A stretch of 32,035 nucleotides of DNA from assembly GCA_000320545.1 (NCBI GenBank), contig ADNK01003203.1:1-32035 (forward strand), read 5' to 3'. Every line of letters begins with the position of its first letter. The first letter of the stretch is position 1. The notes beneath the pieces are model-generated. The model saw only the letters and a list, made by a program, of their open reading frames with translations, did not search any database and was not told where the DNA came from. Source of the stretch: Bigelowiella natans CCMP2755. Taxonomy: Eukaryota; Protista; Cercozoa. Below, one piece after another: positions 20,879 to 27,329 of the stretch. The translations under genes and the position numbers were made by a program.

Positions 20879-21309
20879 TGGATTCCAAGAGCAGTTCAAA
20901 TTCTGCGTAGAGTTATCAGCAAATTTGGCATCGCGTCAATATTCTTTTATTGTCGCATGAGTAAGCCTGAGCCTAATTCTTATCGTAGGGCCATTGGGCA
21001 CTGCGCCAAGTTCATCCGACTAGTCCGGAGCGGAATGAGCCTGCAATTTGTGCTGCAACGGTCGTTGCACAGCATTAGAGGGCTCCTGGTTTTTCTGGAT
21101 TTTGCTAAAAGCCAACGACTACCAACTGTGGTTGTCGCGACAGTGGTTTACCAGACAATTTTACTGATTCGCATCCGTGGTTTCTTTATTTCGTACCGAA
21201 ATGCCTTTGCTTGTTGATTCATTTCGTCGAAATTTCATGTCGCAGGTGAGAAAATCCGCTTTTGGACTTACAATGAACAAATCCACACAATACGAAACAC
21301 TCCTGTGTG

Positions 21310-22817
21310 ATGGAGGCTGTCTCCCGCGAGGAGGAGACTAAGTCGGCCTATGCAGAAAGCACTGGGGTTGAGTCAAAAGGTAAGTTCGTTCGAAATCTCG
21401 AAGGTAGGATAATTGAATGTTTGTTCTAGGTGGCCGACAATTTGACTGCTTAGAACTCAGTGCACTGAGCAATGAAAATGAAAGAAAAGGGAAATGTGAC
21501 TATCATGACAAAGGCAATATCAGGCGCCCTGTAAAGAATCTAAAAATTGAAGACAAAGACCCAATTCAGCCTCTGTAAGTACATTTATCAGTTGGGGAAA
21601 GGAAATGAATCCCAAGTATGCGCATTCTCATGAAATGAATTCACTCCTAGGTGGCCGAGAGCAGATAATTGGCGCCTGTTTATTTTTAGAGTTGTTGACG
21701 ATACGCAGTCATCAAAAGTTTCAGTTGCATTTTCAATTTTAAGGTATAAAATCTTCCATCTCGTACCTCAATGATCCTGCTCTAATAGTCGGAAGTTTCT
21801 TAGCTCCGCCGCAGTTGTCGTGTCTTGTGTCGTTCTGGTAAGACACAACTTCAGTTTCATTTCTAAGCCGTTGTTAATTTGAAATCATTACGTCGACATA
21901 CACAATTAGCTCATCAGTTCACTACCTGAGTACCGGTTTCCTGCCTATGGCGAAGAAGAGAATGATACCGCTCCAGGTTGCTGGATTTATTGTTAAATCA
22001 TCGAACCTGTAACAAAAAATATTCGATACAGAACTGGACATGATAGAGATGGGTGTAACGATATTCTTCACAATAGAATACTGCCTTCGATTATTTACTG
22101 CGAGCTCAGCATCTCACACCTATCTTATGACCGGTGATTGGGAAGTAGAAGGAGAAGCCTACGATGATGATGATGGAAAGGGATGTTGCAGTTGCCTTAC
22201 ATCAAAACTTTCTCCCGAATTAAGAAAACACCTGGAAAATACTACGACGTTCTTTTCCCGGCCATTAAATATAATTGATCTTGTGGCAATTCTTCCCTTC
22301 TATCTCGAGGTCTAGGCGTTGTGTAACTCAAACTATTAAAATGGTGATTTTGTCATTGCTAATTTTTAAGAGTGCGACGGGAGCATCTATTAATCTTACG
22401 AGTCTCCGTATTGGAAGGTTGATTAAATTGTAAAGTAGCATTTGGTAAGTGATCTGTGATATCTATAATTATTACCAGATTGATTCGACTAGTTAAGCTT
22501 TTTAAGAGTAATCGCATGATTCCTCTTTTAATCAACGTTTTGACTCGGTCTGCCAACATTCTTGCCCAGGTATCAGAACCTGTTCCATATTTGGGTTTAA
22601 AATTTAATTGTTCATCCTCCCCTCCCCCCACCCCCCTTGTCCCAGATCTCGGCTTTGTTGATCGTGTTTGTGCTTATTGCCGCATGCTTTATTTTCATCT
22701 GCGAGCAAGGCGAGTACAATTTTGACGCTCAACAATTTCAACGCGTCAACGTCTTTGGCGAAAAGGAGGTTCTCTCATCACTTAAACTTACTAGTATCCT
22801 CTCTTGTAGTTAGCAAA

Positions 22818-22859
<42 letters not shown>

Positions 22860-24989
22860 TTGTTAGCCCACTCCGTTCACCAATATTTACATCTCAATGT
22901 GGTGGGCTATTGTCACCTTCACCACTGTTGGATATGGAGATATGGTACACACATCTTCCTTTGTTCCATTATTGTACAAGCGTAGCCAATAAATAACAAT
23001 TATGGTTAAGGCCCCATCTACACCGGCGGGGAGAGCTATTGGATGTGTGATAATATTTTGCTCCTTGATTCTATTTGCAATTCCAATCACCGTTGTGACG
23101 GATATATTCTTACAAGAATATAACAAGTCAGAGGAGCAGGATAAAGAGTTCAAAGAGGGGCATTTCCCGCTTAATCCGTGGAAGAGTGAAAATGAACGGA
23201 CAAAAGCGCAAGCAGAGGGTCGATTATTTTTCCAGATGCAAGCGAGGATTCAGTATCAGCGGGTACATGGATCCTCAAAGCACAAAACACGTTGGATCTG
23301 GTGGCCGCAGCAAGGAAGATTGATAGAGAAATTGTTTCTTTTGTGGGAGTACAGCAAATCTGGAGTAGTTGGTATGATACTGCAGACTTTTGTAAGGCTC
23401 GCAATTATTCTATCCGCTGTTGCGATTACTGTTGAATCTCTTGAGCGATACCGCTTCCCAAACTTTGGGGAAGAAGAAGGGGATAGCGCCCCTGCATTCT
23501 TTGTAATCGAAACTGTCGCAGTCTCTATCTTTAGTGTCGAGCTTCTTTCACGGTTCGTTAGCGCACCTTTCGTAAGTAGTATATTTCTACAACGTTGTGG
23601 CTATTGTTTTAAATGGGAGATTGGTGAGCCAGAACCCTCTGCATATCACAAGTTCTATGCTTGGCTGAACAATACTATGACCATTATTGACATAGTCTCG
23701 ACTGTACCATATTACATTGAAGTCTTCACTTCTGACCTACCTTCTATATCATTCCTTCGAGTTTTACGGTTGTTGCGACTTCTTCGCTTAGCACGTTTAG
23801 CAAAATCCATGAAGGGTCTGACCATACTAACTAATGCCCTCGAAGCATCTCTGAGCCCGCTTGCTTCGCTAGGAGTAATTCTAATCGGATGGACTATTTT
23901 TGCTAGTAGTGTCATGTTTTATTGCGAGCAAGGAGAATGGAACGAGGAGGAGGGGTTTTACGAAAGAGAGACCTTTTTTGGAGTAAAGGAGCGCAGCCCA
24001 TTTCGATCAATCCCTGATACATTTTACTGGATGGTAGTCACAATGACCACAGTAGGGTACGGAGATCTCTTTCCCACCTCTTTAGCTGGCAGAATTCTTG
24101 GGTCATATATATTGTTTATCTCCATCATCTGTTTGGCTATTCCAATCACAATCGTTGCAGTTAATATTGACAAGGCGTCGACCGAATACATGCAGCAACT
24201 ACGACGTCCAAATTCTGTTGCAGATATGGAGGGAAACGACGACCAGGATGCAGATAACAATACAATTAATGCAGGGCCAGACTCCGCACTGGACTTTGCG
24301 GAAAACCTTTATGCTCTAGCAGGAAGAGTCCATGCGTCATGTGAAAAGGTGCATTTTTCTAAATTAATGAGATCGCATCTCTTCCTTGTTGGTTAATGAA
24401 ATGTTTATTTTTAGGTGGATCTTGCAATAAAACCCTTCTTAGGAACTTCTCCGCCGAAATCGAAAAAGGAAGTTGGCTTTCTTCCCCCGGATTGTTTGAA
24501 ATTAGCGGATCGTAGTCTTCAAGCAATACAGCATGCAAGTTCGATAACGGAAAAAAATATAAACATGCTGATGAATACAGAGTTACAAGTCCTTTCGGAG
24601 CTTCCATGCAGAATATTCTACAAAAATATAGCTGCTTCCAGTACACGTTTGGCCTTACGTTCATTTTTCTTAGAGTGGAAATCATTTGTCAAGGTGGCTC
24701 GAAAAGAGGGGAACAGAAAATCTTTTGATAGAAAGTCATGTGATACCACAGACTCATCTCTAGCTACTGGACCCGCATCACTGTTTCGGATTAGATCCAA
24801 GGTTGGAGACCATTTTTTATTTGTAAGACATTTATATTTTGGTCAATATTCAATTTAATCCTCTAACCTCTACTATCATTTTAATTTTTATTACAGGACA
24901 CAGTAAGATCAAGCAACGGTCTATCCCCAGCACTTCGAAACTATAATGATAAGGAACCTCTCAATGCGCGTGGAGTTGTCTCTGTTTGA
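21310..24989 (+). CDS. Tandem (2 x 6TM) voltage-gated potassium channel, ~947 aa, 13 exons
   Basis: Exons 21310-21379, 21430-21574, 21651-21743, 21804-21837, 21910-21976, 22032-22309, 22371-22417, 22479-22569, 22646-22768, 22867-22944, 23011-24348, 24415-24801, 24897-24989 (TGA), 2844 nt, all phases compatible. Unit I: S3 [15 protein letters not shown]4 [15 protein letters not shown], pore [20 protein letters not shown]6 LFAIPITVV. Unit II: S3 [15 protein letters not shown]4 [18 protein letters not shown], pore [20 protein letters not shown]6 CLAIPITIV. An alternative 9-nt first exon (ATG TCG CAG|gtgaga at 21237-21245) is possible. Confidence 0.9.
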
Positions 24990-25019
24990 ACATATTTTTC
25001 ATCAAATTCTTGCACATCA

Positions 25020-25620
25020 CCATCTACCGATCTAGGACATCTAGACATTAAAGTAGTTCTATGTCACAATGTTCATTGTCGATTTTACCCATCATGTGAC
25101 CAGCTGAAGCGTGAGTATGGCTATATGACACGAGCGTAGCTAATTAGCCAGCGAGAAATCTATGTGCATTACGAGACTAGTGCATTAGCAGCATGGCTAG
25201 ACGGCTAGACGGCGTATAACAACTATCTAGCTATGCTTGTTTCAGAGACTTGCTTGTGCACATGCATCATATACATTCAAGTGCACTCTTTCTAGCTAGC
25301 TAGCTAGCTAGCTTTGCTAGAATGAAGCCCTCTCATGTCTCACGTCAAGATGTCTAGATGTTGCATCTAGGCATCGCTAGCTCTAGAGCTAGCTAGATCG
25401 GCCATCGACATTTAGACATCCAGATATTCCAATTCGCCCTGCTAGGCAAAACATCACCCTTCTCTAGTTCTAGCTAGCTAGCTCAGAGCTAGCTAGTCTT
25501 TCACGTCTAGACATGCTAGCATGCTAGCATGTTGTTTACCTTCATTACTAGATTATCTTATCTAGTCATGAATCGTACAAAAACAAGCTAGCAAGCAGGC
25601 AATGTCTAGATGTCATATAT
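25020..25620. other. Strongest CTAG-rich spacer, including (CTAG)n runs, between the convergent K+ channel and gene 8
   Basis: ctagctagctagctagctagc at ~25292, repeated tgtctagatg/catctagaca, catgctagcatgctagcatg. Confidence 0.8.
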
Positions 25621-25663: not shown

Positions 25664-26956
25664 TCATGATGAAGATTTTGTAATTGAGTCGTATGCTGCT
25701 ATGGCAGACAGTTCCTTCAGTTTCCTGTATGATATTGACATTGTAGTGCTGCCGAAAGGAGTGGCCGCAAACCAAAGTTGTTGAAAAATGAAACTGTGAT
25801 GCGAATCATTTTTGAAAACCAAAAAATAAAGAAGAAGAAGAATTGGATTGAATAAATGAAAAAGAAGAGCCAAAATAAATACAAAGAAAACAGGAATCTG
25901 GAAAAATATTACTCTTATAGCTGAGTTATGATTCACATCATTACTTAAGAGAGCAATCGTGTTTCCTATAAGGAAAAAATAAACTGTATATGCAACCGCA
26001 TATGGAAATAGGTACCCTATTCTGTTACAAATTCCCTCTCCTTTTGTCTTTACTAATGCTTTTAGCACGAGAATTGAGATGAGAATGATGGCTCTTATTG
26101 AGAATAGCAACGATGTAATAAATGCAAATGTCTCTTCTGGATTTTGAATTTGTGCCCCACGAAAACCAGCTACAGCTAATATGATGATATCTTCGCTTTC
26201 ATCAGAAAAAAATAACATAAAATGTTGCCAATCAAGAAGCAAACCTAGTTTTGCAAGTGTGTAAGTAGAACTTTCTTTCGATCCAGGTGCACGTATTTGT
26301 TCAGTGGATGCTCTAAGTTTTACCTATTATATAAAGCGATACGAATTTATTATTTATATAATTCGTGATTCATAATCATTAGTATCGCTTACCATCAGAT
26401 TTCCAGTCCTACAGTAATCTGCTCCTCTTACGATGAATGACAATGATCGTATAATGTTTAATATTCCGAGAGTCAGTGCGTATATTGTCCAATTACCAAC
26501 TATGTCTTCATCTCGAACGGTTGTGAAAAGTACAATGTCACTCACCACATCTAAGCATTCCAACACAAAGCTTAGGACCAAGTATTCAAAATACCAACAA
26601 TGTTTAAAATAGTCTATCTTTTCATCCAGCACAATGAAACGTAGCACGTTCTCTTTCGCATTAGAAGCATCTTTCATAGCTCTCGAAATCACTGCTTCTG
26701 TAAAACCATGTTCCCTATTCTCAATCAGATCCACAGCTACTGATCTTTTTTCTTTGGACAATTCCTCCTTAAACACATGTGCATGATATGTTATGAAGGC
26801 TTTGCTGCACATCGAACATTTTTCAACTTGCCTAGCACGAAAAAGTATGAGCATGCTGCTTAGGCTGGAATGAGAAAATGTTTCCACCTCTTTTCGATGA
26901 AGAAATTGATCACCATTTTTTGATTCCACGGCTGGTTCCATATTATCCATTGCCAA
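25664..26956 (-). CDS. Multipass membrane protein of unknown function, 2 exons
   Basis: Exons 26956-26393 and 26323-25664 (TGA), joined by a 69-nt intron (gtaagc...ataatag) that puts the two ORF-track ORFs in frame. About six hydrophobic segments, including LECLDVVSDIVLF and DESEDIIILAV. Confidence 0.7.
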
Positions 26957-27329
26957 TTTTCAGTATTCGATAATTTTACATGACATCGCTGGTTTTTCGT
27001 TGACGCGCGTAAGAAAGGCCTTGAAAACTACCTCATTTTACAAATTACGTCAACAGGATCTGTCGCAAACCGTAAATCGATTTTATTTTGGATTTAAATG
27101 TTTGCCTTTCTGCGATCATTGCTCCTCCGACATGAATGCGCTGCAGTTTTGCACGCGCGACAAACACATAACATCACAGCAGTCATAAGTTCGCTGAAAG
27201 TTGCGCTCAATCCGAACCGCACTTCGAATCTGTCCAGCACTAACTGCTGCATTCAAGCAAAAATCGAGTCCGTCGAATTTCTGAGAGGGGGCGCTCCTTG
27301 TTCTGGCTTTTGACTGTGGCGTCCAAGTC

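What the first reader, a model, noticed from the sequence alone, without database searches (positions are those of the whole stretch)
21310..24989. Natural tandem-dimer Kv channel: two complete voltage-sensor + K+ pore units in one polypeptide
Seen: a single spliced frame encodes S1-S6 twice, each with TTVGYGD. Unit I S6, the linker and all of unit II lie in one continuous exon (23011-24348), so the fusion does not depend on my splice calls. The halves share distinctive loops ([15 protein letters not shown] vs [15 protein letters not shown]; [16 protein letters not shown] vs [16 protein letters not shown]), pointing to an internal duplication. Established: Shaker-type Kv channels are tetramers of single 6TM subunits; the familiar 2x6TM channels (TPCs) lack the GYG filter; K2P and TOK channels have two pores but not two S4 sensors. 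Inference: a dimer-assembling, two-fold symmetric Kv, the K+-selective analogue of the two-domain step in channel evolution. No T1 domain is evident. I cannot verify whether such proteins have already been described in protists.
Basis: partly seen in the sequence, partly recalled or inferred. Interest (0 to 1): 0.85.

Follow-up and report, generated by a model that had tools for sequence, protein, structure and literature searches.

The report
Two-repeat tandem voltage-gated potassium channel
This marine alga has a real gene for a voltage-gated potassium channel with two channel units in one chain; the design was reported in related protists in 2020, but I found no paper that tested one in the lab.

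Summary
A 13-exon gene (21310-24989, 947 aa, no stops, all GT-AG introns) encodes two S1-S6 units, each with a TVGYG filter, and no T1 domain. A public transcript contig spans both pores. It confirms 10 of 12 introns and retains two; those two sit at identical positions in the Amorphochlora orthologue. The genome is Bigelowiella natans (JGI model Bigna1/83110).

The architecture is already described. Pozdnyakov et al. [quoted passage not shown] Both of their Lotharella proteins are among my hits (47% and 40% identical) and fall in the same repeat-I and repeat-II clades. B. natans has at least four such genes; the scan noted a similar gene on another contig.

Added here: split-repeat trees favour separate internal duplications in the cercozoan, dinoflagellate and oomycete groups (AU p=0.006 against a shared cercozoan-dinoflagellate repeat I). 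Repeat I consistently lacks the outermost S4 arginine. Most likely it is a depolarisation-gated K+ channel built as a dimer of two unequal units; this is untested. Verdict: new member of a known kind. Side leads: a four-repeat Kv-like protein in Diphylleia and tandem Kv-like ORFs in Chloroflexota genomes.

The parts
21310..24989 (+). 13-exon gene for a 947-aa two-repeat (2x6TM) Kv-like channel; same gene as JGI model Bigna1/83110, which has a different, longer 5' end
21310..21574 (+). exons 1-2: about 70-aa cytosolic N-terminus, no T1/BTB domain
21651..22309 (+). exons 3-6: unit I pre-S1 helix, S1, S1-S2 loop (YRFP), S2, S3
22310..22370 (+). intron 6; retained in transcript L001 (puts a TAG in frame); donor at the same position in the Amorphochlora orthologue
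22371..22506 (+). unit I S4: 47-nt mini-exon 22371-22417 plus start of exon 8 from 22479; five periodic R/K, Thr at the outermost position
22418..22478 (+). intron 7; retained in L001, which reads A instead of G at 22418; same phase-2 position in Amorphochlora
22646..22944 (+). exons 9-10: unit I S5, turret (CEQGE), pore helix with WW, filter TTVGYGD at 22921-22941
23011..24348 (+). exon 11 (1338 nt): unit I S6 (about 23029-23109), cytosolic linker, all of unit II, start of the C-terminus
23296..24165 (+). unit II S1-S6; S4 at about 23752-23805 with six periodic R/K; pore helix with YW; filter TTVGYGD at 24046-24066; S6 with PIT
24415..24989 (+). exons 12-13: cytosolic C-terminus without a Pfam domain; stop ends at 24989
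24990..25113 (+). 3' untranslated region covered by transcript L001

Best explanation
[quoted passage not shown] Shown: one gene and one transcript carry two 6TM units, each with a full voltage-sensor charge set and a TVGYG filter; the units come from an internal duplication older than the split of Bigelowiella, Lotharella, Gymnochlora and Amorphochlora. Inferred: two chains supply the four pore loops, so the channel is a two-fold symmetric dimer of I-II pairs. The covalent link would replace T1-guided assembly and fix a 2:2 stoichiometry. Inferred: depolarisation moves S4 and opens a K+-selective pore, giving an outward or delayed-rectifier-type current. Inferred: the two sensor pairs differ, since unit I has five S4 charges and unit II six.
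For: Gene model and filters; transcript across both pores; conserved intron positions in the orthologue; two Ion_trans hits and no BTB_2; best PDB sequence matches are Kv1-Kv4 and Shaker, E 1e-25; the AlphaFold model has both units helical (mean pLDDT 73.7) and unit II matches Kv subunits (Kv4.2 Z 17.1, rmsd 2.5 A over 250 residues; TM-score by target 0.8-0.86 for Kv TM-domain chains); full-length two-repeat relatives in four named chlorarachniophyte genera; the paper's Lot6 and Lot8 are P0123 and P0260 and share the repeat-I (100/99) and repeat-II (100/99) clades with this gene; the S4 charge pattern is conserved across the clade.
Against: No electrophysiology found for any member. PMC7576140 warns that selectivity cannot be read from the filter motif alone. 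Both B. natans transcript contigs are incompletely spliced: L001 keeps introns 6 and 7; L023 starts inside intron 10. The dimer was not modelled. Both S6 helices have Ser at the Shaker hinge-glycine position and PIT for PVP, so gating may differ from Shaker.
Confidence: 0.8

Rival explanations
1. Built-in regulatory heteromer: one unit (probably I) is a weak or modulatory partner, in the manner of animal silent Kv subunits, so the tandem is a fixed 2:2 mix of a main and a modifier unit. This is a refinement of the best explanation, not exclusive of it.
For: Repeat I lacks the outermost S4 Arg in all cercozoan-clade rows (Thr, once Ala); the repeats are only 35% identical and form separate clades; unit II of this subclade has Tyr at the Shaker W434 position, a change that speeds inactivation in Shaker (PMC7266152); PMC7576140 also notes unequal S4 charge between repeats.
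Against: Both units keep an intact TVGYG filter, the S2 and S3 acidic counter-charges and at least five S4 charges. The S4 register is my alignment. The equivalent W366Y mutant of Kv1.2 looks near wild type on first inspection.
Confidence: 0.3
2. The tandem channel conducts cations non-selectively or is barely voltage dependent (leak or organellar channel), despite its Kv-like sequence.
For: PMC7576140 notes that similar filter motifs occur in non-selective HCN channels; the S6 hinge Gly is replaced by Ser in both units.
Against: The whole pore signature, including the aromatic pair and the Asp after GYG, matches Kv1-4; S4 charges and counter-charges are conserved across the family.
Confidence: 0.1
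3. This copy mostly makes unproductive or partial messages, or the two units are separate genes or an assembly join.
For: L001 retains introns 6-7 with an in-frame stop after S3 and reads A at donor 22418; L023 begins at 22961 inside intron 10. Raw reads were not available.
Against: Unit I S6 and unit II share one exon; L001 joins unit I exons to unit II; an intron-free Lotharella transcript (L024) and single-ORF genomic copies (L014-L016) encode full two-repeat proteins; the frame is intact and 55% identical to the Amorphochlora and Gymnochlora orthologues. The A at 22418 is also what spliced reads would contribute at that junction.
Confidence: 0.06

Closest known systems
[quoted passage not shown] 2020, PMC7576140)
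   Same: 2x6TM, TVGYG filters, unequal S4 charge between repeats; 47% and 40% identical over the aligned region; same repeat-I and repeat-II clades.
   Different: Different species and paralogue. Bigelowiella is not in that paper's supplements. The nearest sequences here are a B. natans paralogue and the Amorphochlora and Gymnochlora proteins.
[quoted passage not shown]
   Same: Same architecture; Prorocentrum 2Pm906/2Pm20439 matches P0125.
   Different: About 26% identity; repeats group by lineage, suggesting separate duplications; the dinoflagellate-type proteins keep the S6 hinge glycine.
Animal Shaker-family Kv1-Kv4
   Same: Closest solved relatives by sequence and fold.
   Different: Single 6TM subunits that form tetramers through a T1 domain; here two units per chain and no T1.
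Two-pore channels (TPC), K2P, TOK, four-repeat CNGK
   Same: Tandem-repeat designs of the same superfamily (discussed in PMC7576140).
   Different: TPCs lack the GYG filter (established knowledge); K2P has no voltage sensor; TOK has at most one 6TM-like unit; CNGK has four repeats with cyclic-nucleotide-binding domains, absent here.

Membership tests
[quoted passage not shown] | Two 6TM (S1-S6) repeats in one polypeptide | tested here: met
[quoted passage not shown] | TVGYG-type filter in both repeats | tested here: met
   TTVGYGD at aa 335 and 688
[quoted passage not shown] | No cyclic-nucleotide-binding domain | tested here: met
   no cNMP_binding hit at E<=1
[quoted passage not shown] | First and second repeats fall in separate clades with the published chlorarachniophyte members | tested here: met
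   repeat I 100/99 and repeat II 100/99 with Lot6 and Lot8
[quoted passage not shown] | One transcript spans both repeats | tested here: met
   L001 spans both pores, though two introns in unit I are retained in that contig
Animal Shaker-family Kv (Kv1-4) | N-terminal T1 (BTB_2) tetramerisation domain | tested here: not met
Animal Shaker-family Kv (Kv1-4) | Single 6TM subunit within the metazoan Kv clade | tested here: not met
   two units; animal Kv rows form their own clade (100/96) apart from this gene
Animal Shaker-family Kv (Kv1-4) | Depolarisation-activated, K+-selective current | not testable with these tools
   needs electrophysiology
Two-pore channels (TPC) | 2x6TM chain with a Na+/Ca2+-type, non-GYG filter | tested here: not met
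   2x6TM is present, but both filters are GYG and the best sequence and fold matches are Kv; no TPC among the rows listed

The most novel reading that the evidence does not exclude
The chain is a natural, fixed 2:2 heteromeric Kv whose two units have split roles (five-charge sensor with WW pore helix versus six-charge sensor with YW pore helix; Ser hinge and PIT gate in both). Recording it would give the first functional picture of a two-fold symmetric voltage-gated K+ channel, from a duplication independent of those in dinoflagellates and oomycetes.
Probability: 0.35. Interest if true: 0.55.

Novelty: new member of a known kind. Interest (0 to 1): 0.3.

Why it matters
What remains useful: this is a genome-anchored, expressed member of a family so far known mainly from transcriptomes and, as far as the paper library shows, never recorded. 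It is a natural version of the concatenated dimers that biophysicists build to study subunit cooperativity and C-type inactivation. The split-repeat tree speaks to a question the 2020 paper left open, whether dinoflagellate and chlorarachniophyte tandems share one origin, and favours separate origins. The side leads (four-repeat Kv-like protein in Diphylleia, prokaryotic tandem Kv-like ORFs) may be newer than the finding itself.

Tried and rejected
It was assembled only inside a local script to check frame and compare the halves. Searches used single exons by reference or database proteins returned by the tools (P0122 is JGI's own model of this gene; it carries a 5-residue insert in S1 that L001 does not support). 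The alternative donor at 22430 also keeps the frame (951 aa) but breaks the S4 periodicity; rejected because homologues and the Amorphochlora intron fit 22418. Dependence of the fusion on splice calls or on an assembly join: rejected. TPC or Nav ancestry: no support. Whole-model structural matches to Nav/Cav chains (rmsd 4-30 A, 13-18% identity) show only that two units pack as in a multi-repeat channel; they do not tell adjacent from diagonal placement. A dimer model could not be run. Paper searches for Bigelowiella tandem K+ channels and for Diphylleia four-repeat channels found nothing specific. No DNA-level direct repeat remains between the halves. One paper search failed on a too-short term.

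Full report
Observation. The region 21310-24989 holds a 13-exon plus-strand gene. Joined at GT-AG introns of 50-98 nt, the exons give 947 aa and a stop at 24989 with no internal stop. The filter TTVGYGD occurs at aa 335 (22921-22941) and aa 688 (24046-24066). The halves align at 35% identity over 282 columns, including the YRFP and CEQGE loops. Pfam finds two Ion_trans stretches in the database model of this gene (E 8e-70), and no T1 (BTB_2) or cyclic-nucleotide-binding domain at E up to 1. My joined model was built only in a local script to check the frame; it was sent to no search tool. Searches used exons by reference or proteins that the tools returned.

Transcript evidence. A search with exon 11 found a 100% identical protein on a 3103-nt JGI contig. 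Mapped to the window, it covers 21297-25113, runs through both pores and lacks 10 of the 12 introns at the modelled junctions. It retains introns 6 and 7, which flank the 47-nt exon carrying the start of S4 of unit I. Both introns are real: the Amorphochlora orthologue has a donor at the same place after S3 and the same phase-2 intron inside the second S4 arginine, and relatives share the spliced S4 sequence. The contig reads A for G at donor 22418. Spliced reads would put that letter there, but a donor-site allele would too; this is unresolved. A second contig with more sequence differences (probably another strain) starts at 22961 inside intron 10, most simply a fragment of unspliced precursor.

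Identity. The cluster of that protein contains Bigelowiella natans JGI model Bigna1/83110, so the genome is this chlorarachniophyte alga. Full two-repeat relatives occur in Lotharella globosa, Amorphochlora amoebiformis and Gymnochlora (40-55% identity), and in dinoflagellates and oomycetes. At least three more tandem paralogues map to this genome, on contigs C1151, C706 and C570.

What is known. [quoted passage not shown] They noted TVGYG filters, unequal S4 charge between repeats and separate repeat clades, proposed duplication or fusion, and left the physiology open. Short stretches from their supplementary alignments identify their 2Lot6 as P0123, 2Lot8 as P0260/P0135 and 2Pm906/2Pm20439 as P0125. 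Bigelowiella is absent from their supplements. I found no functional study of any member; the library lacks most subscription papers.

Origin. In a maximum-likelihood tree of separated repeats (58 rows, 257 columns, LG+G4), unit I of this gene groups with repeat I of Lot6 and Lot8 (100/99) and unit II with their repeat II (100/99). The two clades are sisters (97/92). Dinoflagellate-type repeats I and II are sisters (100/93), as are oomycete repeats (98/97, with long branches). A tree forcing the cercozoan and dinoflagellate first repeats together is rejected (AU p 0.006). A larger quick tree agrees, although it places one long-branched single-unit row in the cercozoan group. This favours an internal duplication in the cercozoan line, separate from the dinoflagellate one, where the paper was undecided. 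Caveats: no mixture model; several dinoflagellate-type rows have no taxon name; conversion between repeats could mimic the pattern.

How it most likely works. Shown: each unit has the acidic counter-charges in S2 and S3, a periodic S4, a pore helix and filter, and an S6 with PIT. The closest solved relatives are Kv1-Kv4 and Shaker by sequence (E 1e-25) and by fold. The AlphaFold model (pLDDT 73.7, pTM 0.68) matches Kv4.2 at Z 17.1 and 2.5 A over 250 residues of unit II. Inferred from the four-loop rule of K+ pores: two chains make one channel, with two-fold symmetry, and the covalent link stands in for T1. Inferred: depolarisation opens a K+-selective pore (confidence about 0.8). The units differ. 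Unit I has five periodic S4 charges, with Thr (once Ala) at the outermost position in every cercozoan-clade row; unit II mostly has six. Unit II of this subclade has Tyr at the Shaker W434 position, which speeds inactivation in Shaker, though the Kv1.2 equivalent looks near wild type on first inspection (PMC7266152). Both S6 helices have Ser where Shaker has the hinge glycine (Shaker numbering from my own knowledge). These features make split roles plausible but are untested.

Verdict. The mechanistic reading is reasonable; the novelty is not, because the architecture and this very clade were published in 2020. It is a new member of a known kind, interest 0.3. It keeps some value as an expressed, genome-anchored member of a family for which I found no recording. 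The homologue search also turned up a four-repeat Kv-like protein in Diphylleia rotans and two-repeat Kv-like ORFs in Chloroflexota genomes. Neither is in the 2020 paper's main text, and both deserve their own check.

Noticed in passing
P0265 / P0137 (EukProt EP00002 Diphylleia rotans P038719, P038718): A 1148-aa protein with four Ion_trans repeats, each with a TxGYG filter and S4 charges, and no cyclic-nucleotide domain: a single-chain four-repeat Kv-like channel outside SAR. Its repeats group together weakly, with one single-unit row inside (82/87). It comes from a Trinity assembly; not verified. A paper search found no description.
   Followed up: partly
P0159 and P0156-P0160, P0164, P0174, P0176; loci L017, L018, L020 (1796-3979), L021: 728-740-aa single ORFs with two Ion_trans repeats and altered filters (LTGYG, NVGYG in P0159), among ABC-transporter genes; 100% match in a Chloroflexi MAG and 84% in a Thermoflexus-labelled MAG. 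[quoted passage not shown]
   Followed up: partly
P0157; L019:6001-7761: 586-aa two-repeat Kv-like ORF with a CxxC knuckle after each repeat, on a prokaryote-like metagenome contig of unknown taxon.
   Followed up: partly
L014:5932-8799, L015:10001-12871, L016 (P0251, P0262): Intron-free members of the same cercozoan-type tandem clade on gene-dense metagenome contigs among eukaryotic genes. The organism is unidentified; the clade may extend beyond chlorarachniophytes.
   Followed up: partly
P0209 and P0207 (EukProt, taxa not looked up): P0209 has four Kv-like repeats with filters lacking GYG; P0207 has two repeats that do not group with the SAR tandems.
   Followed up: no
G000:C1151:28010-31338 (L003), C706, C570, C3583, C2630, C3582: Further tandem-type paralogues in this genome. 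The C1151 gene also has one long exon starting at S6 of unit I, while the C706 and C570 genes are intron-rich in unit II. JGI model Bigna1/67293 (P0009) has only repeat I and may be a truncated model.
   Followed up: partly
window:22310-22478: Both introns flanking the 47-nt S4 mini-exon are retained in transcript L001, with G>A at the donor 22418; an in-frame alternative donor at 22430 would add four residues inside S4 of unit I.
   Followed up: partly
window:25029-25621: 593-nt CTAG-rich stretch bounded by 21-nt inverted repeats (90% complementary), overlapping the 3' UTR. It looks like a small non-autonomous element, but only two short matches were found elsewhere in the genome.
   Followed up: partly
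window:19220-20266 (-), 25667-26323 (-), 26357-26959 (-): Neighbouring open frames of 349, 219 and 201 aa, partly hydrophobic, without Pfam hits at E<=0.1.
   Followed up: no
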